Assembly (NCBI GenBank): GCA_044892525.1
Contig: CM097887.1
Span: 42,284,001 to 42,348,000, forward strand
Origin: Schmidtea polychroa
Taxonomy: Eukaryota
Length of the DNA: 64,000 bases
Reading direction: 5' to 3'
Shown here: positions 19,016 through 39,956 of the stretch, one piece after another
Layout: each line of letters begins with the position of its first letter
Position numbering within the stretch: the first letter of the stretch is position 1
Made by a program: the position numbers and the translations under genes
Notes under the pieces: model-generated
What the model was told of the DNA's origin: nothing
Seen by the model: the letters and a program-made list of their open reading frames with translations, nothing else
Databases searched by the model: none

Positions 19016-19953
19016 TCATTTATTCAATGAATTGAATTTTCGGTCGACGTTATACGCCTTGATCCAGACATCGGTTAAGCAAACCACTGAATGGAATCGG
19101 AAAAAGAGAATTAACGGAAAAACGATATTTCCAAAAATCTTCCAGGTCTCCGAATTGAAATATTTCATTTCTATCACATACAAATCATACTTCGGTCCTT
19201 GAATCACTTCATTTAGCCACATGGATAAGTTAGAAATTATAGCAAATGTGACAAAAGATCGGCCTGGTTTTTCTTTAATTTGTTTTCTACTTCCTAAACA
19301 CTTCCTTGAACTTTCGAATACGAACAAAACTTGAATTGATGCCTGAATGATGCTAAATAGAGCTTTGACTCTGATTACATTCAACGCCATGGAAATAAAT
19401 ATTTCATTTATTTTTGGATTATGAATTAACAGAATTGTTAGCATCGTATTGTACAAGCAAACTCCACTCCAACCAATCATTAATAAGTTACCATCAAAAG
19501 CTTCCTCTTCTGATAGATCCCTAAAATTGAAATCTTTCATTTTTACTATGGCAATTATTATAGACAAAAGCAAAAGAGAGAGAAACAATAAATCACAGCA
19601 ATTATGCAGAAACCGCCCTTCAATCACATTGACCTTTTCGAGAAATTGCCCAATCGACAGATTAACGATTGATAAAACAAAGATAATTAATCCTAAAAAT
19701 AGGCCTTTGAAGGTACCATGAAATTTACTAAAAACTGATTGATAGGTCTCCATTTCAGACATTTGGTGATTGATTGAAGAAATGGGAAACGACGTGGAGA
19801 GGCTGTGGAGATATTTATAAAATACTGCTGCACATATTAAACAATATTCTACACAGCAAGGATTTATATAACGATTTATATATTTTGAAAAGGTAGATCC
19901 TCTTTGGACATGATAAAAGGTCTGATTTAGAAGGCCTTCATTGAAAGAATAAG
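19016..19953 (-). CDS. OTOP: Otopetrin last exon (C-terminal six-TM half)
   Basis: Acceptor ttttag at 19954-19959. Open frame from TYSFNEG..VEYCLICAAVFY through FFRFHS..AYNVDRKFNSLNK to the stop. Confidence 0.95.
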
Positions 19954-22900
19954 CTAAAATACATACAATTAAATAATAATTAAATATTGAAATTTAACAA
20001 ATATTATTAAATGGGGGTTCATCGGAATATCTTGGTCACCAAAAGTTAATAATTGTTAAAACCCTCCAACGACCATCACCGAGATATATGACGTTTAAAC
20101 TGATATTCCTTCCTTCGTCCCATCATATATAATATATTATGTATGTAAACAAAAGTACAGGCATCTATCGAATTACGCATTGAATTAGTTATAAAACTGA
20201 CTTGAAATTTTTGAAAAAAAAATTTAATTTTCATAAGTTATATCCCACGTTATTTAACCATTATTATAAGAAAAGCAAAAGAAATTTTAAACACGTAATT
20301 CAAGTTATGCAGTACTCTAACGTTACATGTAGCTGAAATATGTATATATTGTACAAAATAAGTAATTAGGTGTGTGTATTAAAAGTGTGTAATAATGTAA
20401 ATGAAATATTTTAATGTTACACAATTTCCATATTCAATCTGCTATAAAAAGATAACTGTATATGTCGTAGGCAAATGGTAATTTTAGGAAAATAACATTT
20501 GGCTAGGCAAATACCATTTGCTTGGTCAAATAGCTTTAGCTATTATTTCATTTCCATTGCTTGGGGGTGTGTGGTGTTGAATGTACGTGTACCCTTGTGA
20601 CCCGTACCCCTAGGGGGACAAATTATGGAAATGAAATAATAGCTAAAGCTGGCATTTTGCCTAGCCAAATGTTATTTTCCTAAAATTACCATTTGCCTAC
20701 GACATATACACTGCGAGATAGATGCACACATCAATTTTAGTGTCATTCAATTAGAACTACATCAATTAGACAAATGAAAAATGCATCGTGTTATGTGTAC
20801 ATCCTTCGACATTACAAATGAGCATAAAATTTTAATTTTATTGTGGGTTTCTCTATTTTCTATTTAACCACAGGATATGTAACGTGAATATGACGTAGAA
20901 CTTGCCGGCTTAAACCATATTCAATATGGAAATGATTCATCCATTTATAAAATTTTATGAATCAATAAATCAATTTAATGTGAATATTTTATGAAGTTTT
21001 TAATTATATTGAAGAAAAGGCTGATGAAAATGATGGTCATATTGAAATATGGAAAATGAGTAAGTTTACCAAGCGGTAATATTACTTTCCTTATCTTTGG
21101 AAGAAATAAAAATAATTGACAAAAGTTTTCATAAAAATAAATTAGAACCTCGACAATATAAATTTAACTAAACCGTCAGATAAATGTATGTGTTTCATTA
21201 ACAAAATTAACAGTAAATTAGAGTTTATAAAATTTCTATAATAAAAAATGCACTCAACAAAAATTGTTACAGATAAATTTAAGAATTAAAAAAATTACGA
21301 ATATTTTGAAAGGTATTTCTAATTCACAAAAGGAGATATCCCTTTCTGGTACGCTGTATTCAAAATGATTTGATTAGTACTAAGTTAAATTCATTTTAAC
21401 TCATTTTTACTATACTGCTACTTGTCTTTCTTTGACAAACTGGCAATTCTGTTTATTTGCCGGTCACTTTTATACCCGTCTCGTAATTTTAATATCGCCC
21501 TATCAAATTAGTTTGGATACTTTTCTCCGGGATTCTTCTTACCGATCTAATTGGCTTCGGCAATTTATTCATTTTTTGATAGTTTACACTAATTTAATTA
21601 CTCGTCGGCTAATTCTATTGTTCCTTCCTAATTTGATTGACCACACGGGTCCTTTCACACAGCTCGAGTTTTCCATTGGCTCGGGTTTTTATTAGCTAAT
21701 TAATTTTTAATTAATTTTAGTTTTTGTAATTGCTTCCTTCTGGGGACCCCCGTTAACTTGATTTTTATTATATTTGAACTCGTCTCATTGTTCGGCATCC
21801 GCTCATACCAGTTTCCCCCGGAAAATATTCCTTTTTAATTTTTTTGATTTTTAATTAATATTTTTATACTTTAAATTATTATTGTGAATTTGATGTTCTT
21901 ATTGATTTTCACCTATAGAGATTATAGTATTTTTTTACACGTATTCAATATTAATTGTGATTTTTATAACATTTGCATTTGTTTTTTTTTGTCTTATTCA
22001 AAACATTCCTTCGCATTGATTTGTCGGTTTTAATTTGTTTTTAATAAAAAATGTTTATAATAAAATAAAATACTTCGATTAAAATGTTTATTTATTGACA
22101 TTTCGTGGTCTATTTCATCGACTACCATTTTCAACCATAAACAAATATTTGTAATAACAATCTGACTGATCAAAACTCGAAAGACAATATGATTGCAATG
22201 GAAGCTGATCTAAATTGAAAATATTGCACAATTAAATTATATAATCATTACAATTAAAATTTATATTAAATATTGTATATGTTACAGTTAAAGTATAAAC
22301 CTAGACGGTTCTAGGACAAAATGGTACGGACAAAATGGTACTAGGATTAAATGGTACTAGTATTAAATTATATAGATTTAACTTTGTTTAAATAGAATAA
22401 TAAGTTTATTTTTTTTTCAAATGCATTTAATTAATTATTGCCCTAACACATAAGTAAGTATTTTTTATTTAGCATAAATTTCTGACTCTTTCCGTCTTTC
22501 GTTTAATAATATTAAAAACAATCCAAAAATCTAGACAATATATAAATTATAATGAATAAATAAATTTAAAAAAAACTAGTGTCAAACATCTAAGACTATA
22601 GGCCTACTCAGTTACAATGTTTAGTTTATGCTTAAACAGTAAACACCTGCAATACAGTGTCTCTCAGACAACATTTATATTGAGCACACGCGCAATATCT
22701 CCCAAATATGTAACCAGATCTCGGTTGTTATAATCGACTACCATGGTGTGAAGTGCTTCATTTATGCGGACGTATTCTTCTTGATGTGACAGTTTGTTGT
22801 ACGCTTCAATAATCTTACAACGATTTAATTTTTATTTTTTCCCATTGAATCACAAAAATTTAAAATAATAACATAAACAATGAAATGATCAAACATAATG

Positions 22901-25900
22901 CACTTAGTGCCTCTGAAAAAAATTGATTTTTCCTCTTTTTTGCCTGGCTAATTTATATTGGATTGGAGTAAACGTAAACAAAAAATCTATTCCAAGTCAT
23001 TTTTTAATTTCAAAGGTTTGATTTCTCAATTTAATTCAATTATTTCATAACAATATTATACAATAGTGATTTAAATAATTAAATCAATAATCTTTAAAAT
23101 TATTAATTAGTTAATTTTTCATGTATGTTGGGGGTATTTTAATTTAATATAAAATGTCACCAAGAACCAATAAATAAACAAAATATATAATTGCAGCTTA
23201 ATAACATAAATAAATAAGTTGATCAATCACATCCAATTTGTTAATAATCCTATTATTCACATAGATATTGTCATCATTGATTATTGTCCACATGTATATT
23301 TATCCTATATTTATTTGTTCCTATTATGTAATGTTTCAGTTTTAAAATCTAAGTGTTCATCCATCTTCTAACAGTTGCTTATATCCCACTATATCCCACT
23401 TATATCCCACTTATATCTCACTTTCATAAATACTTCGGCATTTTTATTACTCCATGAAGCTTGTTGTCACTCCTTAATCCTACTAATTCTATTGCTCTTT
23501 TAAATCGAAGTTCATTGCTCGTTCTTTCCCCAAATTTGGCTTCAATGTTGCATATTTCTATATTATTATTATATTCAGTTGCATTTGCCCTGTTATTTCG
23601 GACAACTTTCATTAGTTTTATGTCAAACCTACGTAATAAATCGATTCCTCCAATTATCGATGGAGATACATTTTCAACTACTAGAAAAACAATATTTTCT
23701 TCTCTACTTCCTATATTTATTCTAAGCTTGATTCTTCCCCAAGTTTTTAATGGACTCCCATTTGCGCACCAAATTTTGTCTCCGCGTTCGTTTAAAACTG
23801 GATTTCCGATCTCCTTTATAATCGAACTATCAATCACATTCATTCTAGCTCCTTTATCCAACAAACAATTCTTAAAGTAATTATTTATGCCTATTATTAC
23901 ACATGGACGTCCACCCATTTTATCATAAACAATATTATACTGATCTTTCTTCAAATATGTTTTACTTCTATTTTGTATTCTACAGTCACATGTATCAAAT
24001 ATTCTCTCCTTTTCATTATGTGCATAAATCATATTTTCTGTTTTTTAAAATTATTTTACGTCATCTATCGATAAAATCTGAGTACAATTATTTTCGAATT
24101 CTTTTTTATTATCGTCATCAATTTTTATTTTTTTAAAATTATTTTCATTCGGCATTTTTAAACAAAATTGCATCATGAATATCCGTAACTTTATTTTTTA
24201 CATTTTACATTATTTAACATTGATTCGCTTTTTTAAAATTTGTTTCCAGCTCATTATTTTTTTCAACTAAATCGATATTTCCTACAATTTTACTGCTACA
24301 ATTATTTCTAATTACATTATTCTCATCCAACATTTTATCATTTACTTTATTTAAATTATCTACGAAAGGAATTATACTATTCACGTTATTATTAATATTT
24401 TCTACATTATATACATTATTTACAAAAGGACTTATACTATTCACTTTACGACTAATACTATTAATATATTTATATCTACTTATACAATTATATTGGCATA
24501 CACAATCGTCATTATTACCCATTAATTCATTGCTCCGATCATCTCGCCTATGGATGGAGCTTCTTGGTTTCGGGAGTCTTCGTCTTGACATGAGATCTTT
24601 TCGTCGTTCTCGGCTTGATCAGTCTGAAACGCGGCTACCTGTGTCCGTCTCGGTGGTCCACACTCGTCTGGGCATCTTCTTCTGTCTGTCTGATTCCCGC
24701 TTTGAAATCGTAAGTGGCGTCTTCTACCGCATCCTGAGCACGATATTGATGGGTATTTCTCTTCTTTTGTGTCCAATATCTTTACACGCAAAACATATTG
24801 TTGAGTTTTTATTTGTAAGTCGGTCCTTTCTCTGACTCCTCGTGTTCTTATTTTACCAAATCAATGAAAACTCAACACAAAATAACTTTATTTGATTTTT
24901 ATCACAATTACAATTCGTCACTATTTGCACCTTTCTCTCAATTCAAATTTATTTCGTTAAGGTATAGAACCCAAGGGGCAATTACCTTTTCCTGTACGAG
25001 TCTAGCTTCTTTATAATTCACAAATTTCCTCTTTTGACTTGTCCTTGCTGGATTTTCTGTTTAGCTTTTCCTTTTTCTCTTCGACCAAATGGCGGCTTGC
25101 TCATTTCTAAGCTCTCCTCTTATACTGTGTCTAAGAGGCCAATTATCTAGCAAATTCAAATTAATTGTTTCCCCGGGCACCCTAAGTAAATTTTGAAAGG
25201 TTTGACAATTATTTTAATTTGTTTACCCTGAAATTATAAATCGAATTATTATTACCTTATCTGGTGTCTCGGGTCTCACTGCGCATCGGGTTTTCTTCAG
25301 TGCTCGGGTTTCCCATGGGCTCGGGCTTTCCATTGGCTCGGGCTTTCCATTACAGATTAATTAATTTTAATTAATTTGTTTTTCCTTATTAACTTTTTCT
25401 ATGATCACCCTATTACATTTTTATTATGCTTTCTAACCTCGTCTAACAATTTGGCATTCAACCATACCCGATACCCCCGTTCAATATTGATTTTTAATTT
25501 TCATTAAATTTTAATTAATTTTGTACTTATATTGATTTTACCAATTTTTGTTCTGCTTTCTGGTACCATGTGAAATTTATTTTGCTTTTGCTCTAACCCC
25601 AACAATATCATGTATGCATTCTGTGATCTCTGATTGCACTCTATGGATTGGTGCCCTTGGTTCTCGACATTCTCAACTCACCTTATGACCCACCTCCTGA
25701 CAATTCCAACATGTAATAACTGGTCTATTTCTAACGGGCATTTCTCTTCGTTGAAATTTGCTCTGGAAATTATATGCTTTCATGCTTGGTGTTGAATCAT
25801 ATCTTTGTTCACTTCGTTGTGAATTTATAAAAATTCTGTTTGGGTTCTGTCTGTCGGTAAATACTTTTCTTGTCTTGACAATACTCGCAAACGTGTCCTT

Positions 25901-28900
25901 CCTTATATTTATAACTGAAATTCCCGATACTTCAATATTTATATCATCGACCTTCTTTATCACTCCTTTTATTTCGACGACGCTCATCGCATATCTCATC
26001 TTTATTTCTTTCTGTGTATCCTTGACTTTGATACAATGGACCAAAAAATATGACATTAATTCGTTCTTGTCCCATTTGTGCTTCAGAACTTGATCAACCA
26101 TCTTTTCTATTTTTCGAAATATACTGGGGTAGTATCCTCGTTCTTTTCGTAATTGTAGAGGGTTAGGAAATCCGCTATCAATGTTGTTGGCTTCTTGTAA
26201 ACCTTTTTCAATCTGTCTTCAAAACAAGTTTCATTTTCTTCTATTGCTTCATAAATCGGCAACAACTCTCTTGTGATCAAACATTTGATCATCATACTTT
26301 GACTGGATTGTTCTAGTCCACATAGTTGGAAATACGTCTTGCATTGTCTTGATCATTGCCAAGGTTGTCATGTTAATAATTTAAGTCTAGTTGCTTAAAG
26401 ATATATACAAAAAAACTGATTTTGTAATAATTGGTAATAAATAACCGATTTGAATTGCAAATTAATTAATTTAATAATAATGATAATTATCAGTGCCATC
26501 ATTTATACTTATTATACTTTTACTATATAATAGTATTTGTTACTTATAATACAATATATATTTTATTTATAAATTAGTTATTTAAATATCCCTAACATAG
26601 ACATTGTGCTTCAGCGGAGTTTTGTGGATCTGATAATAATTTTCAACACACAGATGAGTTTGTATGTTTCTTATACATCAGCGGTTATAAATTATGAAAC
26701 AAGAACAAATATTACGGGCAGTTGGTAATTTATTCCCATGGATTTTTAATTTATTTTCAAAGGGATAAAATTTTAAACTTTTTATTTAAATACTTATTTG
26801 AAAGCACTTTTAAAATGCTTTCGTTCAGTAATCATTTTGCGATTTTCTATTATGTAAGTGTAGTAATATCCTCCCCGTTATTTGACTTCGATCAATCATT
26901 TTATCAATTATTTAATACCTATTTTTATAAAACTTTAGAATTTTTATTTAAATTATAAATTATGTTTTCAATGCTTTTGCAAATTTACGATAAAATTATC
27001 ATTATTTAAAAATCCCAAAGCTTACTCGATGGTATTTAAAAATAAAATAAGTTTGCCAGAAAGTAAATGAAGCATGACAAATTTTTTCTATAATGGTAAC
27101 AACCTCTGTGTAATAACTAGGACTCTTTTTATAAACATTGGCCATATATTCAGCAATGGAAAGTACATCACTTAGAATGGAAGCAAATCCAAATGCTTAA
27201 TTATCAAGTATTTGTCAAAAATAATCTTAACTTTTTAAAGCTTGCTACCGATAATTCCAAGACGCAAATAAAGATTGATTCCTTCTCCAAGTTTGTCAAC
27301 TTTTGGCTTCTTTAATAAAATATTTCTATTTCTAGCATGTAGCCTACTGGAAAACGAAGGTCTTCGTTTGATATCTCCTTAAGTAAATAGTTTAAAGACA
27401 AAAAATAAAAGATTTTACTTTCAACATTTTCGTCAGTAATTGTTTGGATATCATTCGACAAACATTCATTTTCTACAAAAATATAAAACAGTAATAAAAC
27501 AAAATTTTTATTTATTTTCATTTCAACAATAAATAAAAAATTTATTTGATCTGTAGCAGTAATGAAAATAAATTAAATGTCAAAAAAAATCAAAATAAGT
27601 GAAAGGATCAAAGAATAAAAGAATAAAAAAACACTTGTCCTCCACTGGTGATGGAGCAAGTAATATGATGAAGTTTGGAAAAAAAATCATTTTAGTAATA
27701 TCAAATATGTCTTTTCCGTGCCTTGCATTTGACTGTTACGAAAACATTTTATAAAGAGAATTTCCTATCTCAAGGAGCTCCCGGCTTAGATTTAGAAGAA
27801 GCCGAAAATTTTGATGAAATAAATGATATTTTAATTGGAGGAAATTGAGATAAAGAATGATTCATTCAAGAAAGACATAAATATTGTGAGACTTGTCGTA
27901 ATTTTGTCAGATTTATTTAAAAGAAATTCCAAATAGAACAACAACTTTCTCTTGGCTGTAAAGCCAGATGGAATTCAATACTAAAAATGTTTGGAACTTT
28001 TATTAAGTTATACGATGTTACTAAGGAAGTACTTATTAAATTAGGATCTGAGCATCTTTTAACAGACTTGAACTTTGAACTTTTAAAATATATAATCTTG
28101 GCATTGAAATTCCTTGAAATTCCTCTTAATGCTATGGATGAAAAGCTACACTATGAACAGTTAATGCAGGAAAGATTGACTGACGAAAAAGCTGAGATAA
28201 GTGGAAATCTTGTAAAAGAAATCGAATTTTAAACGAATAGTAGAATCCACCACGACATCAGAGATATAATAAATTTATTGAACAACCTGGATAAAACACT
28301 TTGAGACCACTTTGATGAATCGACTGTTTCCGTTGTTAAACATTTCAACGGATGAAGAAATTAGTTATAAATTACAAATAATTAGCAATGTCAAAGTTTC
28401 GTCAAACCTGTTCAAGTTAATCGAGATGAGAAATTATACCAAGAATTTTCTTTGTTAAAAAGGTAAAGGTGAGTTGAGAGAAAATCTAAAACAATTACTT
28501 GATACCCTCAATACAATAAAACCACCATTTTCAGTAGATAATAGTTTCTGTACAAAGATTCGGTCAAAGTTATCAGACAAATCATTGCACGTGCTCGTTT
28601 TTTAAAATATTATTTTATTAATTAGAATGTCTAAATAAATTTTAAAAAATTATCTTTGAATGATTGCTATTTATTTTATCTATATAAGTAATCTAATAAT
28701 TAAATTACCTATTTAATAATTATCATGATGCGTGTGTGTATGTTATTGTATGTCTGAAACGTGTCTCATATCTCATGTTCATTATTACATTTTAGTTTTC
28801 GAACCTAACGAGATAAATATTTGAACTGTTAGTAGATATTAGAAAATTCTGAACTTTGATTTATTTAACAACCTATATTGTACTTTTAATACTATTGTAT

Positions 28901-31900
28901 TTTAAACTCTAAAGCTCGAAAGCTGGAAATAGATATCAAGATCGAGGTTTCCTACATATTTATTTACAAGTATTTAAAATAATATTTTAAAAAGTATTAC
29001 AAAAACTCAAACCGTGACTGGAAATTTGACATATATTCAGAGCATTTTTTTTGTCATTATAATAAATATATCCAATAAAATAAAATATAGCACCAGTCGA
29101 AAAAATGTATTGAGTTGTTAGAAAAATCTGAAAATAATAAAAATAATATTAATATATTAAATGAGTATCAAATATATCAATTATTTTGACTTTTATGGGG
29201 TTAACTTGACATTAATCAATTCAATTTGCAGTTTATATCGTCGTTTCCAAAACTAATCAAGTTCAATAAATAACCAAATATTTACCACTCTGTGTTGCTT
29301 GACATGCCGGAATTATGCTTTCCTACTGAAATGATTAATGTTGTCAACTAGATTTTGATTAATTGCGGTAAAGCCTCTCTAATTAGTCAATGTCGGAAAT
29401 TAAATTTTTTGACGAATTTGAAATGGGTAAAATATAGATAATTTTATTTAAAAATTTCGACATAAATCATTTGTATTGTTTTAATTACAGCAATTCTTTG
29501 CAAAAAAAGTATATACAATTAATAAACATATTTATTTTTTAACCAACCAATCCTAAAAGTTAAAAGTCGCAATAGTTTCAATGGCTTTTCTTATGGATTC
29601 TATACATTTAAATGGTTTTGAATCAAATGGTTTTTGGTTAAAATATTCCTTGATTTTTTGCAAAACCCCAAAACATTCTAACTTTGTCATAGTTCTAATA
29701 GTTTCATTTCGAGTATCGCCATCATCAGCCATGAAATTTTCAAGCCTTTCGACGTCTGTAACATCAGTTTCAGAAATTTCATTAACAATGACATCATTCT
29801 CTGTGAAATTTATTTGAATAAAAATGGGAATGGATCTATTAAATTCAAAATCTGGTAAAATTCTTGGAAAATTTACTCAATGTTTTCTAATACTTCTTGT
29901 TGAATTTTTTCTGAACGTCATATTCAATTTCGATCACTTTATTAGGAATTAGTTCGTCTGATAATAAGGCACTTCTTGATACCAATTCCAATATAGATAT
30001 TAAGTTTTTTATCAACATTTCTTTTATCAACAAAGCTGACTGGCCTATTATTTATAGTACATTTTTTGAATAGAGACCCATTCTTCTTCTTTAAACCTTT
30101 CTTTACGTCATCTTGAAACCCAACGCCAATTTTTCATTATTATATTCGTGTTCAGTTTATAGTTTCCTACCTGCAAATATTATTTCCTCTGGAAAATATT
30201 ATTAGTTATATTTTTAATTATTTTTTTAGATTTTAATTTAGTATTAAATTTTAACATTTAGATGCTTTCGTGCTCATATCTTTGTACGTTTAAATTTAAA
30301 TTTAATTTATTTACACAACACAAACGTGAATATTATAATTTGTTATAGTATTTTTTAATTAAAATATTAAAATATTTATTTTTTCATTAATTCTTAGTTT
30401 TCAATGAAATATTTTACCAATTTCCAACTTATTAATTTTTTAATTATTAATCAAATAATTTTTTAATATTTTTCAAATTTATTATATATTTTTTATTTAA
30501 ATTTCTTAAATGATAATTTTTATTTCCAATTTTTTATTTATTATGTTTAAGCAGCAGGAGCCGAATCAGATGTAATCATATACAGTAAAATTTTGATAAC
30601 TCTTTAAAAATTAAAAATAGTTTAATTCATTCTTTTCAAATAAAAAAAATAAATTAAAGTGAACAACAGAAAATATTCAATTTTAAAAAAATTGCAGAAC
30701 ATCTAAAATCTTCCGAAATTACAAAGGCATTCAACGTANNNNNNNNNNNNNNNNNNNNNNNNNNNNNNNNNNNNNNNNNNNNNNNNNNNNNNNNNNNNNN
30801 NNNNNNNNNNNNNNNNNNNNNNNNNNNNNNNNNNNNNNNNNNNNNNNNNNNNNNNNNNNNNNNNNNNNNGTAATAAGGTAATAAGGTTATTTAATTTAAA
30901 TCCCAACAAACATTCAGTAACTTTTAGGGGGTATTTGATTTCTAAATACAGCAATAATGAAATTTCGATATATATATATCGAAATTTCATTATTGCTGTA
31001 TTTAGAAATCAAATACCCCCTAAAAGTTACTGAATGTTTGTTGGGATTTAAATTAAATAACCTTATTACCTTATTACCTTATTATAGTCGCTTAAAAAAA
31101 TAAATTTTTGTTACATTATTATGATTCATTATTTTAAACATTTTCGAATTTTATTGAAAAATTTTTCTAATATATTTAAAATATATTAAAAATAATAAAC
31201 TTTAAAATTTAATAATATTGCAAAAGAAAACTTTTAATCAAAACTCATTAAAATAGTTGGCCCTTTTCTAAGAAAAAAATAAAATACAATTTTTCCTTGA
31301 ATTAGATTTAAAATTGTTCAAATCAAATTTCAATATTATTGGTTATTTTAAAATGAAATTTTCTAAAAAATATGTAATTTAAATTTATATTGAAGTTTTA
31401 TTTTAATACGTTATTAAAATATTTTGTTTAAATAATATGGAATAAATAATCATACATTTCAATTTACATTTGATAAAAATTAAAAAAAATATAAATGTCT
31501 TTTAATAATAAAAAGAGGTCTAGAGCAGTTGATGACGAATTAGTTGGTGAATTTGATTACATTTCAGATGATGAAATTCAGGTGGACCCCAACTTAGCCA
31601 CACTAGAAATAAATGATCCATTCCCAGAAATTGAAGAAGGGGTGAAAAAATATGATACGTTACCCCTTAAGCCTGATCATCTTGTTCGACCTATTTTTGT
31701 GGGGGGCGATGGAATAATTTATTTAGAACTTTTTAATGAAAACCGTAAAATAGTCCAAGATTTCTTAATAACTATTTGCGACCCAGTTTCAAGAAGGAAA
31801 TATCTCCATATGTACAAGTTGACAGACACGTCTTTATATGCTGCAGTTTCCGGTGGGATGAAACCTCAAGACATTTTGAGATATCTTAACATATTATCTA

Positions 31901-34900
31901 AAACTCCTTTACCAGATAATATTGTTAAATTTATTGAGCGTTCCACGGCCAACTATGGAAAAGCGAGTCTTGTTTTACGTCATGGAAAGTTAAAAATTGA
32001 AAGTAAAAATCTTGATCATCTTCGTAAACTGACAAATCATCCCAAAATCCAAAAATGTTTGATAAAATATGAAAATGGATATATCCAAATTCCACAAGAT
32101 AATAAAGACGAACAAAGAGGAGTTTCAGATCCATTTGTTAATGAGGCGGATAAAAACGATTCACATCTTGCTCCTGATATCGTCGAATTTTATAAATATA
32201 TAGAAAAGGTTGATGAAGATTTTGGGAATAAGGAAGACCCCTTGGCAATGTTTAAAAAGGGGAACGTGGTTTATTCTATTGATATTATGGATGATAAACT
32301 AGAACAAGTTAAAAAATATTGTATTGAAATTCGGTCAACTTTATTAACAGAATATGATTTCCTTCATGATAACGCAAATCCTGATATTCCAATGGACCTG
32401 AAACCTACAACATGCTTGAGACCTTATCAAGAGAAGTCTTTGAGGAAAATGTTTGGAAGTAGTCATGCTAGATCAGGAATTATTGTTTTACCATGTGGAG
32501 CTGGTAAAACCTTGGTGGGAGTTACAGCTGCTTGTACAATTAGAAAAAAATGCATTGTGTTTTGTACAGGTGGAGTAGCTGTGGAGCAGTGGAAACAAAC
32601 ATTTCTTCATTATACAACAATAGAAGAAAAAAGAATCTGTCGATTTACGGGACCTACAAAAGATCCGTATAAAAACACAAGTATATTCATTACGACTTAT
32701 AACATCATTGGATATTCTGGTAAAAGATCTCACGAAACCGAAATGACAATGGAATGGATAAAAAATCAAGAATGGGGATTAATACTTCTTGATGAAGTTC
32801 ACACTATTCCCGCAAAAACCTTTCGTAGTGTTTTAAGTGTTATCCATGGGCATTGTATGCTTGGATTAACCGCAACACTGGTCAGAGAAGATGATAAAAT
32901 CAACGATTTAAACTTTTTAGTGGGTCCAAAATTATACGAAGCTGATTGGATGGAATTGACGAATAAAGGTTTTATTGCTCGAGTTCAATGTGTCGAAGTA
33001 CAATGTAAAATGACTCCAGAATTTTATACAGAATATATACGAGCTTCTTCAAAGAAGCAATTGCTTTTGTATTTAATGAATCCTGAGAAAATTCGTCGAT
33101 GCGAATTTCTTATTAAAAAGCATGAAGAAAGAAAAGATAAAATCATCGTATTTTCAGATAATTTGTACGCATTGAGACAATATGCTGCGTTAATGAAAAG
33201 ACCCTATCTTGAGGGTGACACGTCACACGAAGAAAGAATGCAAGTAATGAATGTCTTCAAAACCACCAATAAAGTTAACACAATTTTTGTATCAAAAATG
33301 GCTGACGTAGCTCTCGATTTGCCAGAAGCAACCGTGTTGATACAGATCTCATCACAGGGTGGATCTCGTCGTCAAGAAGCCCAAAGACTGGGTAGAATCA
33401 CCCGTGCTAAGAAAGGAATGAATCCAGATGAAATAAATGGTTATTTCTATTCACTTGTTTCAAGTAACACTCAAGAACACTTTTTTTGTTCAAAACGTCA
33501 ACAATTTTTAAAAGATCAAGGTTATACTTATAAAGTTATCTCTGATTTTCCAGACATGGACAAAGAAACCTTAAGTTATTCTACAAAAAAAGAACAAAAA
33601 GAGCTACTTGCTAAAGTAATGGAAGCTGATGAATGTGAACATGAAGTTGAAGGAAAACATTTAAAGAAGGAAAGAAGAATGATAAACAATAATAAAAATG
33701 ACGTTATGTTTGCAACCATGGCCAAAAAACTCAAACTTCATAAAGAGTCTACAGAAAGAAGATGAACAATATTTTCCGAAAGAGACTAGTGGACCACATT
33801 TTATTTATATCAATAATAATTTAATCAATTTTATTTTAATTTATTTTCGTTTAAATAGAGCTTATATATTTACTCTTTTCCTGCTTATAATATTTTATGA
33901 GTTAGAAATTTTCGTTAAAAAGTACTTTGTTTTAAATTAAAAAAATATTTTTTAAATATAATCATTGTGTTTCAAATTTGTTTTAAAAAGGAAATTGAAA
34001 TAACGATCTATAGTCGAAATCTAAATGAAGAATTTATAAGTGAAAATTATGGGAATTACAACATTCGATTTCAATTGCAAATTATTATTAACTCATAATA
34101 TGTGACATTCATACAAATTATTTCCCATTCGATCTTTTATGTAATATAATTAATATGGGATTCAATTTTCTTTGGAACCGGTACACTTTCCAAATCGTTA
34201 TTGATTTGTAAAATGAAAAATCCTTACGCATTTACTAGTACTTATTAAGAACCAGTACTGGCTGAATATAAGCATTGGACAATATTGTTATAAGCTATCA
34301 GTTATTAGTATTTTGTCATTTATGCTTTTGTGTTAAGAATAATTGTTTGTGTGTTACAACCAAACGATAGATAAAACATAAAAGTTGTACATATTACCAT
34401 TTTTTTGTTTGATTTTAGTTTTTGTGTATGTTGTTTGATTTGAAGCAGTCACTGTACAGCTTCTTGTATATCTTTAGTGTGGGGGAGTTTTTATTGGGAG
34501 CTTGTGATGATTCCTGTTTGTTGATTGGAATGTGTTCTTGTTTTGTTTGATCGTTGTAGTTTTTTGTATTGTATTGGTATGGATCTGCGAATATTTTTTC
34601 GCGTTTCTTTGTTATTTTTGAGTATCGTGGCCACATTTTTATTTAGTTCTAGTAGTTTGTATGGCCCTTCGTATTTTGATTCAAAACCTTTTGTAAATGG
34701 TTTTTTTACTAACACGTAGTCTGTGGTTAAGGCTGTTTTACCGCTTGTTTTTTTTGTCTTTCTTTTGGATCGAGTTCGTTAATCTCGTTTGTTTTATTGT
34801 CTTTTTGTTGTTTTCGCAATTAGTTTTAAGCGAAGGTAGATTTGTTCCTCTGCCAAAAACTTTGTATGCGGGACTTTCGTTATATAGTTTTTTTATCTTT

Positions 34901-35314
34901 TCCAAACGTGACACGCGCTGAACTATGTCACCAAAAATTACAGAACCTAGTTAAAAACAAAAAAACAAAATATAACAATACATTACAATTATTATTTAAT
35001 TATAAAATATGTAATAAGTAAAATATCTTTTGATTATTTTTAATATAATTATTTTTTAACGTATTTTACATAAAGAATGATATAGAACAAAGAGTTTACT
35101 TTTAGTAATATGCTTGGTTCACAATTTAAATCCAGGGATTCATAGAGCACTATTGCAATTCCAATAATTAATACTAGAATTCCGCTAATTAAGCTAACGG
35201 ACACGACAAAAGAATGCCTATAAAATAATTAAAAAAAATTCTCTTGAAATTATTCTTTAACCTTGAATTTTTTATTTTAAAATTAGAAAATGCTAAACTT
35301 CCTTTTTTTCGCAT
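19016..35314 (-). CDS. OTOP: Otopetrin-family proton channel, complete 8-exon model (570 aa)
   Basis: Exons: 35314-35262, 35217-35100, 29127-29013, 27472-27419, 27377-27249, 27195-27026, 22209-22074, 19953-19016. All introns are GT-AG, phases match (2,0,1,1,1,0,1), and the total is 1713 nt = 571 codons. Family motifs: GINLYLRLGIIAFG, HASFTFWQTYFIF, ITNICLW, VEYCLICAAVFY, GLFLG, IIQASIQ, KPGRSFVTFAIISNLSMW, PLILFFRFHSVVCLTDVW. The first exon could extend upstream. The symbol denotes the family, not a specific orthologue. Confidence 0.88.
20457..20710. mobile_element. Foldback-type MITE with 55-bp perfect TIRs (otopetrin intron 7)
   Basis: 20457-20511 is the exact reverse complement of 20656-20710. 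A second perfect 26-bp inverted pair lies at 20532-20557 / 20625-20650. No clear TSD. Confidence 0.85.
21430..21850 (-). mobile_element. LTR fragment of the same family as ~10500 and ~25300
   Basis: Shares ttccattggctcgggttttt..attagctaattaatt. A G-rich PPT-like tract lies at ~21815-21835 on the minus strand. Confidence 0.55.
22300..22830 (-). mobile_element. Mutator-like (MULE) remnant
   Basis: Tandem ggacaaaatggta subterminal repeats (22313-22360) and the minus-strand peptide LHTMVVDYNNRDLVTYLGDIAR, which resembles a MULE transposase C-terminus. Confidence 0.4.
23400..26400 (-). mobile_element. Ty3/gypsy remnants: gag with zinc knuckle, LTR, gag and aspartic protease (otopetrin intron 6)
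   Basis: CWNCQEVGH zinc knuckle in ORF 25673-26101; LTR-like block ~24850-25510; gag-like ORFs 24214-24791; protease LLDKGARMNVID..IIGGIDLL in ORF 23424-24032. No RT follows. Confidence 0.8.
27640..28620 (+). mobile_element. Degenerate hAT transposase (same subfamily as 13061-15594)
   Basis: Fragments TGDGASNMMKFG, ALHLTVTKTFYK and LSDKSLHVLVF parallel TNDGASVM, AVHLAILKVIYK and LGTDTVNALVF. Many stops. Confidence 0.7.
29370..30170 (-). mobile_element. Possible pogo/Tigger transposase C-terminal remnant
   Basis: A TIR-like cggtaaagcctctctaattagtca lies at ~29367. An acidic minus-strand peptide (VNEISETDVTDVERL..TKLECFGVLQKIKEYF) resembles Tigger tails. Confidence 0.3.
30739..30869. other. 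Assembly gap (131 N) inside otopetrin intron 2
   Basis: Run of N. Confidence 1.
30870..31077. repeat. Perfect 208-bp palindrome centred on (AT)6
   Basis: 30870-30973 is the exact reverse complement of 30974-31077. The left arm abuts the gap. Confidence 0.95.
31495..33765 (+). CDS. ERCC3: TFIIH subunit XPB, 3'-5' DNA helicase/translocase (756 aa, intronless)
   Basis: Single ORF with YKLT..SLYAAVS in the N-terminal domain, LRPYQEKSLRKMFG, Walker A LPCGAGKT, LDEVH, GLTATLVREDDKI (RED motif), GPKLYEA, DLPEA, GGSRRQEAQRLGRI and DQGY. Confidence 0.98.
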   Translation: MSFNNKKRSRAVDDELVGEFDYISDDEIQVDPNLATLEINDPFPEIEEGVKKYDTLPLKPDHLVRPIFVGGDGIIYLELFNENRKIVQDFLITICDPVSRRKYLHMYKLTDTSLYAAVSGGMKPQDILRYLNILSKTPLPDNIVKFIERSTANYGKASLVLRHGKLKIESKNLDHLRKLTNHPKIQKCLIKYENGYIQIPQDNKDEQRGVSDPFVNEADKNDSHLAPDIVEFYKYIEKVDEDFGNKEDPLAMFKKGNVVYSIDIMDDKLEQVKKYCIEIRSTLLTEYDFLHDNANPDIPMDLKPTTCLRPYQEKSLRKMFGSSHARSGIIVLPCGAGKTLVGVTAACTIRKKCIVFCTGGVAVEQWKQTFLHYTTIEEKRICRFTGPTKDPYKNTSIFITTYNIIGYSGKRSHETEMTMEWIKNQEWGLILLDEVHTIPAKTFRSVLSVIHGHCMLGLTATLVREDDKINDLNFLVGPKLYEADWMELTNKGFIARVQCVEVQCKMTPEFYTEYIRASSKKQLLLYLMNPEKIRRCEFLIKKHEERKDKIIVFSDNLYALRQYAALMKRPYLEGDTSHEERMQVMNVFKTTNKVNTIFVSKMADVALDLPEATVLIQISSQGGSRRQEAQRLGRITRAKKGMNPDEINGYFYSLVSSNTQEHFFCSKRQQFLKDQGYTYKVISDFPDMDKETLSYSTKKEQKELLAKVMEADECEHEVEGKHLKKERRMINNNKNDVMFATMAKKLKLHKESTERR
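34415..34935 (-). mobile_element. Ty3/gypsy integrase C-terminal fragment (otopetrin intron 2)
   Basis: VLVKKPFTKGFESKYEGPYKLLELNKNVATI matches the GPY motif of gypsy integrase tails. Confidence 0.6.
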
Positions 35315-35484
35315 CACTTTTGTCTAAATGGAAACTTTAATTTATTATGTTTAGTGAAATATAAAATTATATATTTTAAAATAATAAAGTCTTTCACTTA
35401 TTAATTTTTTTTCATTTATTTAGTAATGTATATATCAATTTTTTGTCAATTACAACATTTTTCAAAATAATTTTAAAAGTTTAA

Positions 35485-35666
35485 CTGTTTGCGGACGGTA
35501 GGCCAGTACTGCTGGTCACGAATTTCGTTCCAGACGTGCTGGCCAAACTTTAAAAAAATCATACCACGATATCGGGCATTCGTATACTAAAAGATTTTAT
35601 GCTAAAAAATATACTATATACTGTATACTAAGACTACTTATTAAAGTTAATTCCGTCCACAAACGG
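35485..35666. mobile_element. piggyBac-type MITE (182 bp)
   Basis: TTAA on both sides (35481-84, 35667-70). TIRs ctgtttgcggacgg / ccgtccacaaacgg match at 12 of 14 positions. Confidence 0.8.
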
Positions 35667-36379
35667 TTAAAATCAACCATTTATTATTATCAATTAAATA
35701 TGCATACATTTAAATTTAATATTTCCGCCATTTTTATATATTTAATAATTTTTTTATAAATGTTTGATTTATAAAAAGGGATGGTTTCTTGGTAACACCA
35801 AAAATTAAATGTCAAACAAATAAACGATATGATTTTTTACTGATATCTTTTTCTTGACACTTATTGATAAAATATAAATAATCAAAGCTTAAATAAGAAT
35901 ATTTATCCAACAATTATTACTGCAAACATATATAAAAATTTTATAATATTTGATATGTTCTGACCGACAATTTAAATGTTAAAAAATCAACAAATCAGTG
36001 GCATAGCTAAGGTCTGTGCCACCGGGCAATACTTATATTTTCAACCCTTTATAAAAATCTAAACTGTCATAAACCGTTCATTGAGTCACAATAGCCAACA
36101 AATTAAATGTATAAATGTCATAAAAATAAAAAAGCACAGTAATATTAACAATATACAGGTTTATCCATTAATATATACAAAAATATTCATTAATATATAC
36201 AAAATTTGAATAAAAAAATAAAATAAAAAGTATTATTTATAAAATATTTGATAAAACAAAAAGTTGAGCTTCAATATTATATTACATAATTTACATAATA
36301 TACTTTAGAGCCATATAACTATTTATTAAATAAAATCCTGTCTTGATAAAGCCTTTTTTACATACCTACACATATTCCT

Positions 36380-37260
36380 GAACTAATCGGAAAAATCTAC
36401 AAACTTTTCACTCAGTATCCCTGAAATTTTAAATTTAAAATCATTTCAATAGCTTATAATATTCTCTTGGCTATTTAACTTGAACTAAAATATTCCTCTA
36501 GGATTTAGCTGGGGAGAATACGGAGGTAAAAACCTATGATTAATGCCATGTTGATAAATAAATTAATTATATCACTTCTTTTGTGAAAGTCACAATTATC
36601 AAGGACTAAAACATCATTAGGATGCATTAAAAAGTGTGGTATCAAAAATTCATTTATAAATTTAATAAATTCAATTCCATCAAAAGGACCATCTTTTACT
36701 TAAAACCCAATTATTCCTAATTTTAGTTTCTGTTCTGGTGTAGATTTACGCCAATTTCATCTAAAAATATTAAATTATCATCTGAAACAAAACTTATCAT
36801 TCTTCCATATGCCTGTCGGAGATTTATATTTTTTTCTGAATTTCGATCTTCTTGCACCCGAACAATTCTTTTCCGAGTATACCCCATTGTTTTTATGTCC
36901 CTGCATATAATACTTTGCAATTTTCTTATCCCAACTTTTCTCAGTTCAATTTGAATTTCTTTTTAGGAAAAAGAAGAATCTTTCAATAAAAGTTCGGATA
37001 TTTTCGTCTTTGCTATGCTTTCATTTTAAACCGGCCTTCCATTTTTCTTCGATAGAATTTGTTCTTTTGTCATACCTTCTGAAGTTTTATCGACAATATT
37101 GTATGCTGTTTTTAAGGATATATCAGCATCTTCGGCTATATGTTTAATAGAAAATGTTTTTTTCTAACCCTCTTCAAATCCTTTTCAATATAATCAACCG
37201 ATATTTGTTGCCTAGGTTTTCTGGACTTTCTTTGGTTTTCATTTGATTCAAATTCTTCTG
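36380..37260 (-). mobile_element. Tc1/IS630-like DDE transposase remnant
   Basis: GYTRKR..LIFLDEIGVN (ORF 36723-36920), then VLVLDNCDFHK and FLPPYSPQLNP. Frameshifted. Confidence 0.85.
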
Positions 37261-37759
37261 CGTTCATGTTTTATTCCATAAAATATAGGTATTTTTATCA
37301 GATAATGAATTTTAAAGGTTAATAGAATTAGGATAAATTGATGTTTTATTTAACTTAGTACTTTAGTGAAAATCTTTTAACTATTCTATTATATAATTAC
37401 GCTCATCACTGATTCACTGACTGATTCTATAACGCTCGCTGATTGGTTGAAAAAGCAATTTTTTAAAAGCAATTTAAAAGCAATTTTTTTGTGTGTTTGA
37501 CTAAATCTGTGTGCATGAAATTTAAGGGGAACATTATGATATTTTTGTAAGTGATTTAGATTAGGATTTAAAAGCAATTTAAAAGTAGTTTTTCAAGAAG
37601 TTCTTCAATAAAAACAATTTTTTTGGCAATTTTTTTTTCATTCCATATATATAACAGAAATAATTTTCAAATTGCTTAAGAATACAAATTTTTTTTGTAT
37701 TGAATTTTTAATAAATATTTAGTATGTCAAACTGTTCCTTTATTTTATGATTTGTCAAC

Positions 37760-39350
37760 GGGCGCCTTAGGCGCCTTGCAATTAACTAGTCATTAATGTT
37801 TGATAATTTTATTTTGAATAATGTATATTTAAAATGGTATTTTTTATTCAAATTTTGTATATATTAATGAATATTTTTGTATAGATTTATGAATAAACTT
37901 GTAATAGAGCAAATAACAATCGACAATTTTTAATTGTTTTTGAATGTTAATACCATTAACTGCATTCTATTTGCTTTTTGTCTAGCAAAGTTGTTGATAA
38001 CATCATCAAGGTTTGCTTCCTCCGTTTGTTGATGTTCTATTGATAGTATTATGAGATTTCTCAACAGTAAACTGTGCATGGAAGATCTTAAATAACTTTT
38101 AATTAATAAGCCACACTTACCGCAATAGTGAAGAAAATTCGTAATGAAATAACAATATTCGGAACGGAATTTCAAAAATTGTATTTTTGAATAAACTGTA
38201 AAAGTTCTCAAAAGGTTTTTTCAACAAGGAACCCTTCCTTATCATAAGTTATTATAATCATTATTTAAGGGAAAATTGTAATTTTTGTTTAAAAGATTTG
38301 ACGAAACAAGAAATTCATATTTTGCACCAAGAACATAAATCTGTTGAAATCTCAGTTCTCTTCGCATTTCAGTTTCATGCCGTAATTTAACATCATGTAA
38401 TCCGCCTCCAAACTTTTTAATCTTTTTTTTCATTGACGCTGATGTTGTTCAATGACAATTTCTAGATCATTACAAATTTCATTGTCCACTAGTCTGTGTC
38501 TATTTTCCATTAAAATACCTTTAACGACTTGATCTGGTGTTTATCCTTTCCTTTTCATTAAACAAATCTTTTAGATAATTTAATATGTTTGATTCAAATA
38601 TATGAGTGGAGGGCAAATATGTGTGAAAATATGGTTCAAGACTCAAGAAAGCGTTACAGAATTGATAACCACTGAAGCTGCGTGTAAACTGACTAATTCC
38701 TGAGTATGATTCGTAAATGAAAAAAGCTCTGATTTTTTTTATTAATTTCTTTTATCCGTCTTTGGAAACGAGCATATCTTCCATTCATCAGGGTAGCATT
38801 GTCGTATGCTTATCCCCCACAGTTATAAATATCAAGTCCGTCATTTTCTAATTTCTCCAAAATTATAGTCGAAATAACTTTGGATGTTTTATCTTTATTT
38901 TCCGGTTTGATTTTGATATGCTCTCCCTCGGCACTGGATCATATTTTGCCTACAAATTCACTATTTCTAAAATGTTTTCTCTATTATTAATTGCGATTCC
39001 AGAATTTACATTTAATTTACAATTATGTTTTTGGGAATTTTATTATGTCCAACAATCTTGAAAAGATCAGCCTCCACTTCTTCGTTTCATTCTGTTCTTT
39101 TTTATCAATAGTTACTCAGCAACTAATTTTAATTTCTAGCTCCGTCCATTGGTTGAATTTTCTGTTTTGTCCTTTGATTGATGAACCTTAACGGATGACT
39201 TCACCGAAATCTGAATCTATGTGTTGGACCACAGGTGCACCTTGAATTACCAGTAAGATTGTTATAAAATCATTAATTTTGCTTGGCCATGTACCAGCTG
39301 TTTTTATGTTATCAGCCGGAAAAATGTGGGCATTTCATCGCTCGAAGTTG
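37760..39350 (-). mobile_element. Degenerate ZMYM1-like hAT transposase
   Basis: KWRLIFSRLLDIIKF (~39050), AYDNATLMNG (~38800) and the C-terminus LRSSM..LIILSIEH..DDVINNFARQKA (ORF 37930-38211). Confidence 0.75.
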
Positions 39351-39829
39351 AAGAATCTAAACTTAACTATTAAAACAAATATAATAAATTTCATAACATT
39401 TTTCTTTTTAAAAGAAGACCTAATTTCAATGCTAATTCCGAGAAAGCAGAGCGTGTTTGATTTTCCAATTTGTTAAAAATCATTTTCAAATCCAAATGTT
39501 TATTAGTTTGAATATTTTTATTCATTAAAAAATATTTTTAAATTAATTTTAATAAATTTTATTCCGAAAATCTGCTGTAACTTTGACTTTTACCTACTCT
39601 AAATTTTTGTGTAGGCCAAAGATATTTTTCTCTATAGAAGAGTCATTTTATGTACACCCCTTAGTTAGGCCACCTTATTTCTTTTTAAAAATAAATAATG
39701 GTATATGTCTGTCACATTAAATAATACAGTTCTTTATGAAAATAATTTGATCTCAAAAGAATTTTTTAAATATATTTAATTGAAAAACAAACAACATAAA
39801 ATTGCCATTGACAACTCCGCCGCGTACCA

Positions 39830-39846
39830 TAGGTTGCCGACCCCTG
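39830..39846. mobile_element. Single Charlie-type hAT TIR
   Basis: aggttgccgacccctg is the reverse complement of caggggtcggcaacct. The partner was not found. Confidence 0.5.
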
Positions 39847-39890
39847 ATGACTACGATAAAAAGTATTGATAGAGCTTCTTATAGACATAA

Positions 39891-39896
<6 letters not shown>

Positions 39897-39955: not shown

Positions 39956-39956
<1 letters not shown>

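What the first reader, a model, noticed from the sequence alone, without database searches (positions are those of the whole stretch)
29128..35099. Core TFIIH helicase gene XPB nested antisense inside intron 2 of a proton-channel gene
Seen: the TM1 exon (35217-35100, phase 0) and the TM2 exon (29127-29013, phase 0) flank a 5972-bp intron containing the whole XPB ORF on the opposite strand. Established: XPB is essential for transcription initiation and nucleotide excision repair, so it is broadly expressed, while otopetrins are usually cell-type restricted. Inference: overlapping opposite-strand transcription could couple or exclude the two genes. Caveat: a 131-N gap lies in this intron, so the nesting depends on that scaffold join, although the exon phases and the otherwise missing TM1 support it.
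Basis: partly seen in the sequence, partly recalled or inferred. Interest (0 to 1): 0.7.

Follow-up and report, generated by a model that had tools for sequence, protein, structure and literature searches.

The report
XPB paralogue nested in otopetrin intron
An intact, intron-less copy of the transcription and repair helicase gene XPB does sit backwards inside a 6-kb intron of an otopetrin proton-channel gene in this flatworm-like genome, but gene-in-intron arrangements are common in animals, and the genome has a second, more canonical XPB gene elsewhere.

Summary
On the minus strand I could build one 8-exon, 570-codon otopetrin gene (ATG 35314, stop 19016), with every intron GT-AG. Its phase-0 intron 2 is exactly 29128-35099 and contains the whole 756-codon XPB ORF (31495-33765, plus strand).

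The two short 5' exons are not chance ORFs:
- Profiles of the otopetrin TM1-TM2 region, built from about 70 homologues without reference to this window, rank them first and second among 2,176 ORF pieces.
- Introns 1, 2, 5 and 6 have the same position and phase as in the Clonorchis sinensis OtopLc gene.

No RNA evidence could be obtained.

The N run cannot be resolved. TM1 and XPB lie on the same side of it, and a genome self-match runs 28 places into it, so it is at least partly a mask.

This is not the only XPB. A second intact copy (767 codons, two introns, 66% identical) lies 1.9 Mb away and keeps the conserved C-terminal motif that the nested copy lacks. A decayed third fragment lies at 57433-58013.

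A short, intron-poor duplicate sitting antisense in a long intron is the textbook nested-gene pattern. Regulatory coupling is untested. Interest is low to moderate.

The parts
35262..35314 (-). Otopetrin exon 1: ATG at 35314, 53 nt, ends in phase 2
   Evidence: Sequence read. It joins in frame to exon 2. Intron 1 has the same position and phase (a split Arg codon) as intron 1 of Clonorchis OtopLc.
35100..35217 (-). Otopetrin exon 2, encoding TM1 (..VSLISGILVLIIGIAIVLY..), 118 nt
   Evidence: First or second of 2,176 ORF pieces against four N-terminal otopetrin profiles, matching the TM1 part of each profile. Canonical AG and GT sites.
29128..35099 (-). Otopetrin intron 2: phase 0, 5,972 nt including the 131-N run. 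This is the host intron.
   Evidence: The homologous intron in Clonorchis OtopLc has the same position and phase, directly before the FLxxQY motif, and is only about 700 nt long.
31495..33765 (+). Intron-less XPB/ERCC3 paralogue: 756 codons plus stop
   Evidence: All helicase motifs are kept, and the C-terminal SGADD-VYME-type motif is absent. Against its paralogue, dN is 0.27 with saturated dS.
30739..30869 (.). N run inside the intron, 626 nt upstream of the XPB ATG
   Evidence: A reverse-strand self-match in the genome copy runs to window 30842, inside the N run. It is therefore at least partly masked sequence. Its letters were not looked up.
30870..31077 (.). Perfect zero-spacer palindrome (104 + 104 nt) abutting the N run
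   Evidence: By the arms are at least 132 nt long. Not seen at the other two N runs of the window.
29013..29127 (-). Otopetrin exon 3, encoding TM2 (IFLTTQYIFSTGAIFYFIGYIYY..), 115 nt
   Evidence: First or second of 2,176 ORF pieces, matching the TM2 part of the profiles. 11 of 27 residues are identical to TM2 of Clonorchis OtopLc by eye.
27419..27472 (-). Otopetrin exon 4 (cytoplasmic loop), 54 nt
   Evidence: Frame and splice sites. The motif ..DITDEN.. is shared with a paralogue of the same genome.
27249..27377 (-). Otopetrin exon 5 (loop plus the start of TM3, ..GINLYLRLGII)
   Evidence: Intron 5 has the same position and phase as in Clonorchis.
27026..27195 (-). Otopetrin exon 6 (TM3-TM4, ..FWQTYFIFKYHR)
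   Evidence: Pfam Otopetrin positions 9-60, 25.4 bits. 29 homologues hit it. Intron 6 is conserved with Clonorchis.
22074..22209 (-). Otopetrin exon 7 (TM5)
   Evidence: Pfam Otopetrin positions 63-103, 20.2 bits. 31 homologues hit it.
19016..19953 (-). Otopetrin exon 8 (TM6-TM12 and the stop codon)
   Evidence: Pfam Otopetrin positions 170-434, 155.5 bits. 6e-22 to a solved Otopetrin-2 chain, 8ug4.

Best explanation
This is an ordinary host and nested gene pair. An 8-exon otopetrin-like (OtopLc-type) proton-channel gene runs on the minus strand from 35314 to 19016. Its ancient phase-0 intron between the TM1 and TM2 exons has grown to about 6 kb. That intron now holds, on the opposite strand, an intact intron-less paralogue of the TFIIH helicase/translocase XPB.

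The nested XPB is the derived member of a flatworm-lineage duplication. A second, intron-bearing XPB 1.9 Mb away keeps the canonical C-terminal motif.

Shown: the gene structures, the intactness of both XPB copies, long-term purifying selection on them, and the absence of a nested XPB in a trematode otopetrin gene.

Inferred:
- The copy arrived in the intron by duplication. Retroposition is possible but unproven.
- Each gene is transcribed from its own promoter.
- When both are active, polymerases meet head-on across 31495-33765. This could cause some transcriptional interference but need not have any regulatory purpose.
For: - The gene model is a single 570-codon ORF over 8 exons, with every intron GT-AG.
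- It aligns end to end with full-length otopetrins. For example residues 21-561 match P0134 as one domain, and residues 16-250 match P0149.
- Collinear Pfam Otopetrin matches fall on exons 6, 7 and 8.
- The TM1 and TM2 exons are the top two of 2,176 ORF pieces against four independently seeded N-terminal profiles.
- Homologues uniformly have a short N-terminus, TM1, a loop of about 15 aa, TM2, then a long loop before TM3. The model has the same layout.
- Introns 1, 2, 5 and 6 have the same position and phase as in the Clonorchis sinensis OtopLc gene.
- XPB is intact and carries the family domains and motifs.
- The second XPB copy is intact with 2 GT-AG introns and is 66% identical to the nested one. 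Both are only 50-54% identical to outgroup XPBs, so the duplication is lineage-specific.
- dN is 0.27 with saturated dS between the two copies.
- There is no XPB in or beside the 47-kb Clonorchis otopetrin gene.
- The arrangement matches the published norm: internal genes are short and intron-poor, are often young duplicates, and lie mostly on the opposite strand (PMC5174743).
Against: - There is no transcript evidence for the 35100>29127 junction or for expression of either gene.
- An N run of unknown nature lies in the intron, with a suspicious perfect palindrome beside it.
- The TM1 and TM2 profile scores are modest in absolute terms (10.0-16.9 bits).
- No paralogous TM1 or TM2 exons were recovered elsewhere in the genome for comparison.
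- No poly(A) remnant or target-site duplication marks a retroposition.
- The paralogue's two introns are not at positions shared with a sea cucumber or an annelid XPB gene.
Confidence: 0.8

Rival explanations
1. Scaffold misjoin. The block right of the N run (30870-41878), which carries XPB and the TM1 exons, belongs elsewhere or in another orientation, so the nesting is an assembly artefact.
For: The N run lies at 30739-30869. A perfect zero-spacer palindrome abuts it, which is typical of fold-back artefacts at contig ends in long-read assemblies. This block lies between two N runs.
Against: - The TM1 exons lie upstream of a gene that otherwise lacks TM1, in the right order, strand and phase. 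Both of their flanking introns are conserved in position and phase with a trematode otopetrin. A random misjoin would not produce this.
- TM1 and XPB are on the same side of the N run with no gap between them. Any transcript joining TM1 to TM2 must therefore span XPB, whatever the N run hides.
- The genome copy has letters at least 28 places into the N run, which suggests masking rather than a contig break there.
- The flanks are unique in the genome apart from short matches of 72-89% identity to repeats.
Confidence: 0.05
2. Exons 35314-35100 are fossil or alternative 5' exons that are not used. The working otopetrin transcript would start between XPB and 29127, or at 29127 or below. XPB and otopetrin would then be head-to-head neighbours rather than nested.
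For: There is no RNA support for exons 1-2. An in-frame-looking ATG ORF exists at 27521. Otopetrin expression is evidently low or restricted, since no transcriptome-sized run holds it.
Against: - Without exons 1-3 the protein would lack TM1-TM2, which every full-length homologue examined has.
- No other TM1-like or TM2-like piece exists in the window.
- Exons 1-2 keep an open frame, canonical splice sites and the ancestral intron phases, which argues for continued use.
- The 27521 ATG lies in intron sequence upstream of the acceptor at 27473.
Confidence: 0.08
3. The nested XPB is a silent or dying (retro)copy with no function of its own. The intron-bearing paralogue would be the only working XPB.
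For: The nested copy is intron-less and lacks the conserved C-terminal motif. A clearly decayed XPB fragment lies in the same window, showing that XPB copies do die here. There are no expression data.
Against: - The 756-codon ORF is uninterrupted although the copies have diverged 34% at the protein level and synonymous sites are saturated. dN is 0.27, far below saturated dS.
- Walker A (GAGKT), DEVH, RED and motif VI (QRLGRITR) are all kept.
- The copy aligns to human XPB over residues 12-727 at 785 bits.
Confidence: 0.07

Closest known systems
Nested (intronic) protein-coding gene pairs of animals, as catalogued in Drosophila and mammals (PMC5174743, PMC3814207, PMC8467205)
   Same: The internal gene lies wholly inside one intron of the external gene, on the opposite strand. 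It is short and intron-less and is a duplicate gene. The external gene has long introns.
   Different: The pair itself (an XPB paralogue in an otopetrin gene) is not described in any paper I could find. No expression data exist here to say whether interference occurs.
Trematode otopetrins, e.g. 'Proton channel OtopLc' of Clonorchis sinensis (P0124, KAG5441351.1) and otopetrin of Schistosoma japonicum (P0123)
   Same: These are the best full-length homologues (3e-77). They share the TM1 / short loop / TM2 / long loop / TM3 layout, and four introns have identical position and phase.
   Different: Identity is only about 33-36% over the C-terminal domain, so orthology is not shown. The Clonorchis TM1-TM2 intron is about 700 nt long and holds no gene.
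Human XPB/ERCC3 in TFIIH (e.g. PDB 8bvw, 6nmi)
   Same: About 50% identity over residues 12-727. The N-terminal domain, both RecA-like lobes and the RED, Walker A, DEVH and motif VI sequences are present.
   Different: The nested copy ends before the conserved C-terminal SGADD-VYME..HPLFK tail. It is one of two paralogues, whereas XPB is single-copy in most animals (the latter from my own knowledge).
Duplicated XPB in trypanosomatids (XPB and the repair-specific XPBz/XPB-R) and in Arabidopsis (XPB1/XPB2), as described in PMC4138998
   Same: There are two intact XPB-type genes in one genome. As in trypanosomatids, the copies are considerably diverged (66% identity).
   Different: Functional specialisation is untested here. 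The two flatworm copies are similar in size and both keep all the helicase motifs.

Membership tests
Otopetrin (PF03189) proton channels | Match to the Pfam Otopetrin model above the curated cut-off | tested here: met
   Exon 8 scores 155.5 bits against a cut-off of 27.8, at positions 170-434. Exons 6 and 7 add collinear matches at positions 9-60 and 63-103.
Otopetrin (PF03189) proton channels | N-terminal TM1 / short loop / TM2 ahead of a long loop and TM3. This region lies outside the Pfam model. | tested here: met
   Profiles from about 70 homologues pick exons 2 and 3 as the top two of 2,176 pieces. The layout matches that of the homologues.
Otopetrin (PF03189) proton channels | Twelve transmembrane helices in two six-helix halves | tested here: inconclusive
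   A crude hydropathy scan found about 9-10 clear peaks. No structure was predicted, because a spliced protein cannot be handed to the folding tool.
Otopetrin (PF03189) proton channels | Proton conductance | not testable with these tools
   Needs electrophysiology.
XPB/ERCC3/RAD25 (TFIIH translocase) | ERCC3_RAD25_C, Helicase_C_3 (N-terminal domain) and ResIII domains in the canonical order | tested here: met
   E-values of 4e-103, 1e-23 and 3e-20. 785 bits to human XPB over residues 12-727.
XPB/ERCC3/RAD25 (TFIIH translocase) | Catalytic and XPB-specific motifs: Walker A GAGKT, DEVH, RED, motif VI QRLGRI | tested here: met
   All are present in the alignment with annelid, echinoderm and primate XPB.
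XPB/ERCC3/RAD25 (TFIIH translocase) | Conserved C-terminal tail (SGADD-VYME..) | tested here: not met
   Absent from the nested copy. Present as GGDGPVYMD in the intron-bearing paralogue.
XPB/ERCC3/RAD25 (TFIIH translocase) | Incorporation into TFIIH, with a role in promoter opening and NER | not testable with these tools
   Needs biochemistry or RNAi.
Nested gene pair | The internal gene's coding sequence lies wholly within one intron of the external gene model | tested here: met
   XPB at 31495-33765 lies inside intron 2 at 29128-35099.
Nested gene pair | An external transcript that actually spans the internal gene (a spliced junction 35100>29127) | tested here: inconclusive
Retrogene | An intron-less copy of an intron-bearing parent | tested here: met
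   The nested copy has 0 introns. The paralogue has 2 introns of 50 and 1,835 nt.
Retrogene | Poly(A) remnant, target-site duplication, or parental introns shown to be ancestral | tested here: not met
   No poly(A) remnant or direct repeats are evident in the AT-rich flanks. The paralogue's intron positions are 7-8 codons away from the nearest sea cucumber introns and absent in an annelid.

The most novel reading that the evidence does not exclude
The flatworm lineage may have split the normally single-copy XPB into two long-lived, divergent working genes, as trypanosomatids did with XPB and XPB-R. One would be a canonical copy. The other would be the nested, intron-less copy that has shed the C-terminal tail implicated in repair incision, and it would have a specialised role (for example transcription only, repair only, or specific to stem cells or the germline). 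Its position inside a cell-type-restricted channel gene might then shape where it can be expressed.
Probability: 0.25. Interest if true: 0.55.

Novelty: new member of a known kind. Interest (0 to 1): 0.25.

Why it matters
As a structure it matters little. It is one more antisense intronic gene, useful mainly for getting both annotations right: the otopetrin needs its two far-upstream 5' exons, and XPB must not be merged with or masked by the host gene.

The more useful by-product is that this genome carries two intact, old XPB paralogues and one dead fragment. [quoted passage not shown] A natural pair of diverged copies in an animal amenable to RNAi would let one ask which parts of XPB serve which job.

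If both genes of the nest are ever active in the same cells, the pair would also be a simple test case for head-on transcriptional interference.

Tried and rejected
RNA and read evidence
I worked beside them (30400 onward). Local scripts only read the whole window file as a target for protein queries.
- The look-up of sequencing runs found no RNA run holding the otopetrin 3' exon.

Look-ups that returned nothing
- The look-up of encoding contigs for the window's XPB and for the Schistosoma otopetrin had nothing on record.
- The search for homologous proteins with the otopetrin exon gave one hit. With XPB residues 1-300 it gave none. With whole XPB it gave no relative closer than 60%, so no close flatworm XPB could be compared.
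- A genome-wide search for paralogous TM1 and TM2 exons returned only self matches.
- An N-terminal profile search of five paralogue loci gave only weak hits of 10.1 bits or less.
- Single-sequence phmmer of the TM1 and TM2 peptides gave 11.6 bits, barely above the shuffle maximum of 8.7. I replaced it with the profile test.
- Two literature searches (planarian with otopetrin, planarian with ERCC3) found nothing relevant.

Ideas rejected
- My first parse of exon 6 ending in phase 1 did not fit exon 7. It was corrected to the GTAAGC donor after CGA.
- The ATG at 27521 as the gene start, because it lies upstream of the acceptor at 27473.
- ORF pieces in the intron at 34494-34950 and 29556-30133, which look like transposon debris by eye, have no Pfam match.
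- The test of whether the paralogue's introns are ancestral, which would argue for retroposition, came out negative or inconclusive.

Not done
- I did not look up or infer the letters under the N run.
Full report
**Setting**

The window is G000:C3:42284001-42348000 of a 781-Mb genome of about 27% G+C. Its named contigs C1-C4 are chromosome-sized: C2, C3 and C4 are 190, 145 and 93 Mb, and matches on C1 reach beyond 262 Mb. The nearest named relatives of its otopetrin are trematode proteins from Paragonimus, Schistosoma japonicum and Clonorchis sinensis. The organism is therefore a flatworm. Genome size, chromosome number and AT-richness suggest a planarian, but that is my inference and not a tool result.

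**The XPB ORF**

- 31495-33765 (+) is one uninterrupted 756-codon ORF.
- It carries ERCC3_RAD25_C (4e-103), the N-terminal Helicase_C_3 domain and ResIII.
- It aligns to human XPB chains over residues 12-727 at 785 bits.
- In an alignment with annelid, echinoderm and primate XPB it keeps Walker A (GAGKT), DEVH, the RED motif and motif VI.

**The otopetrin gene**

A six-frame search of the whole genome with Pfam Otopetrin hits window 19094-19882 (-) at 154 bits. One hundred and fifty otopetrin-family proteins came from the representative search. Scored against every ORF piece of the window, they support three minus-strand exons: 27196-27005, 22209-22033 and 19993-19019. Pfam places these collinearly at model positions 9-60, 63-103 and 170-434. 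The Pfam model starts at TM3, so it cannot see TM1 or TM2.

Full-length homologues all have a short N-terminus, TM1, a loop of about 15 residues, TM2, and then a long loop of about 90-270 residues before TM3.

I built N-terminal profiles by jackhmmer from four different seed homologues, about 70 sequences each, with no input from this window. I scored all 2,176 ORF pieces of both strands of the window with them.
- In all four runs the top two pieces were 35228-35052 (-) and 29148-28990 (-).
- They matched the TM1 and TM2 parts of the profile respectively, at E 0.0006-0.08.
- The best score of the same profile in 47 kb of five other loci of this genome was 10.1 bits.

**Gene model**

Reading the splice sites gives eight exons:
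- 35314-35262
- 35217-35100
- 29127-29013
- 27472-27419
- 27377-27249
- 27195-27026
- 22209-22074
- 19953-19016

All seven introns are GT-AG, and the joined sequence is one 570-codon ORF. The protein aligns with full-length otopetrins from TM1 to the C-terminus. For example residues 21-561 match P0134 in one domain.

The exons are 118 and 115 nt. The phase-0 statement therefore holds for this intron, not for the outer ends of the two exons.

**Independent support from intron conservation**

I mapped Clonorchis sinensis OtopLc (P0124) onto its own 47-kb gene (L022).
- Its intron 1 splits an Arg codon in phase 2 at the residue aligned with the window's intron 1.
- Its intron between TM1 and TM2 is phase 0, directly before NFLFFQY. 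The window's is phase 0, directly before IFLTTQY.
- Its introns before GFGFG (phase 1) and after FKHHQ (phase 0) coincide with the window's introns 5 and 6.

Chance ORFs would not reproduce two ancestral intron positions and phases around the TM1 exon. The Clonorchis TM1-TM2 intron is about 700 nt long. The 67-kb locus has no XPB by annotation or by tblastn. Within the limits of uncertain orthology, the nesting is therefore derived.

**The N run**

The window has N at 30739-30869. TM1 and XPB lie together on its right, with no further N between 30870 and 41878. TM2 and the rest of the gene lie on its left. Any transcript that joins TM1 to TM2 must therefore span XPB, whatever the N run hides. 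Only a wrong placement of the right-hand block would undo the nesting. The order, strand, phase and conserved introns of the TM1 exons argue strongly against that.

Directly right of the N run is a perfect palindrome with no spacer, 30870-30973 and 30974-31077. When I searched the genome with 30870-31300, the reverse-strand self-match ran to window 30842, which is 28 places inside the N run. The genome copy read by that tool therefore has letters there. The run is at least partly a mask rather than unread sequence. I did not pursue or infer its letters.

The flanks are unique in the genome except for short repeat matches of 72-89% identity. I cannot say whether the palindrome is real or a fold-back artefact.

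**No RNA evidence**

No run on record as RNA holds the otopetrin 3' exon. The transcriptome-sized runs of this species hold none of its words. The junction 35100>29127 and the expression of both genes therefore remain untested.

**XPB is not single-copy here**

A six-frame search of the genome with the nested XPB found a second locus at C3:40422189-40426377 (-), 1.9 Mb away.
- It is an intact 767-codon gene with two GT-AG introns of 50 and 1,835 nt.
- The two proteins are 66% identical to each other and 50-54% identical to annelid, echinoderm and primate XPBs. Those outgroups are 68-73% identical among themselves.
- The duplication is thus lineage-specific and old. dN is 0.27 and synonymous sites are saturated, so both copies have been under purifying selection.
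- The intron-bearing copy keeps the conserved C-terminal motif (GGDGPVYMD, against SGADDTVYMEY in primates). The nested copy ends before it.
- A third, dead fragment (aa 54-273, three frames with stops) lies in the window at 57433-58013 (+). It is closer to the intron-bearing copy.

**How the copy got into the intron**

An intron-less copy of an intron-bearing gene suggests retroposition. However, I found no poly(A) remnant or target-site duplication. The paralogue's two introns are not at positions shared with a sea cucumber XPB gene (7-8 codons off) or an annelid one (none there). They may be lineage-specific. I put retroposition at roughly 40%.

**Comparison with what is known**

In Drosophila about 10% of genes are nested and about 71% of nestings are on opposite strands. 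[quoted passage not shown] They typically arise when young duplicates land in long introns. Whether interference matters is debated (PMC5174743, read; PMC3814207 and PMC8467205, abstracts). This pair fits that pattern point by point.

Two XPB genes in one genome are known from plants and trypanosomatids. In trypanosomatids the second copy is repair-specific (PMC4138998). I found no report of either the nest or the XPB duplication in flatworms.

**Verdict**

- The structural interpretation is supported at about 0.8.
- The functional inference (coupling or exclusion, and an essential broadly expressed XPB) is not supported by any data and is weakened by the second paralogue.
- This is a new member of a well-known kind. 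Interest is low to moderate, with a modest upside in the XPB paralogy.

Noticed in passing
window 30870-31077 (by the arms extend to 30842-31105): A perfect inverted repeat with zero spacer lies directly beside the N run, about 400 nt upstream of the XPB start. It is either a fold-back assembly artefact or a real long palindrome. The other two N runs in the window have nothing like it.
   Followed up: partly
G000:C3:40422189-40426377 (-) = L020:2189-6377: A second intact XPB gene: 767 codons, three exons, introns of 50 and 1,835 nt, 66% identical to the nested copy, with higher GC3 (0.33 against 0.25). It keeps the conserved C-terminal VYM(E/D) motif.
   Followed up: yes
window 57433-58013 (+): A decayed XPB fragment (aa 54-273) spread over three frames with stops. 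It is 44-57% identical to the intron-bearing paralogue but only 29-47% to the nested copy.
   Followed up: partly
window 23427-26218 (-), inside otopetrin intron 6: Retroelement-like ORFs: a CCHC zinc knuckle (weak) and a gag-type aspartyl protease (6.9e-05), both below the Pfam cut-offs. This is probably an old LTR-retrotransposon remnant swelling that intron.
   Followed up: partly
window 14080-15171 (-): A 364-aa ORF with a BED zinc finger (9e-09) and a weak DUF659 match. It looks like a hAT/ZBED-type transposase-derived gene just downstream of the otopetrin.
   Followed up: no
window 36508-36962 (-): A Tc1/mariner-like transposase remnant (DDE_3, 9e-04, below the cut-off) about 1.2 kb upstream of the otopetrin start codon.
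   Followed up: no
window 18769-18902: Another N run begins only 114 nt downstream of the otopetrin stop codon (19016), so the 3' UTR of the host gene cannot be read through.
   Followed up: no
window 52376-52567 and 51480-51641 (-): The weak next-best hits (8.8-11.4 bits) of the otopetrin N-terminal profiles fall here. They are most likely hydrophobic segments of some other membrane-protein gene, since the genome-wide Pfam Otopetrin search found no match there.
   Followed up: no
G000:C3:97.16-97.27 Mb, C4:21.26 Mb, C2:36.1 Mb and others: The genome-wide Pfam Otopetrin search gave 19 matches. The five strongest other loci each have a large 3' exon matching the C-terminal part of the model, as this gene's does, and three of them cluster within about 105 kb on C3.
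   Followed up: partly
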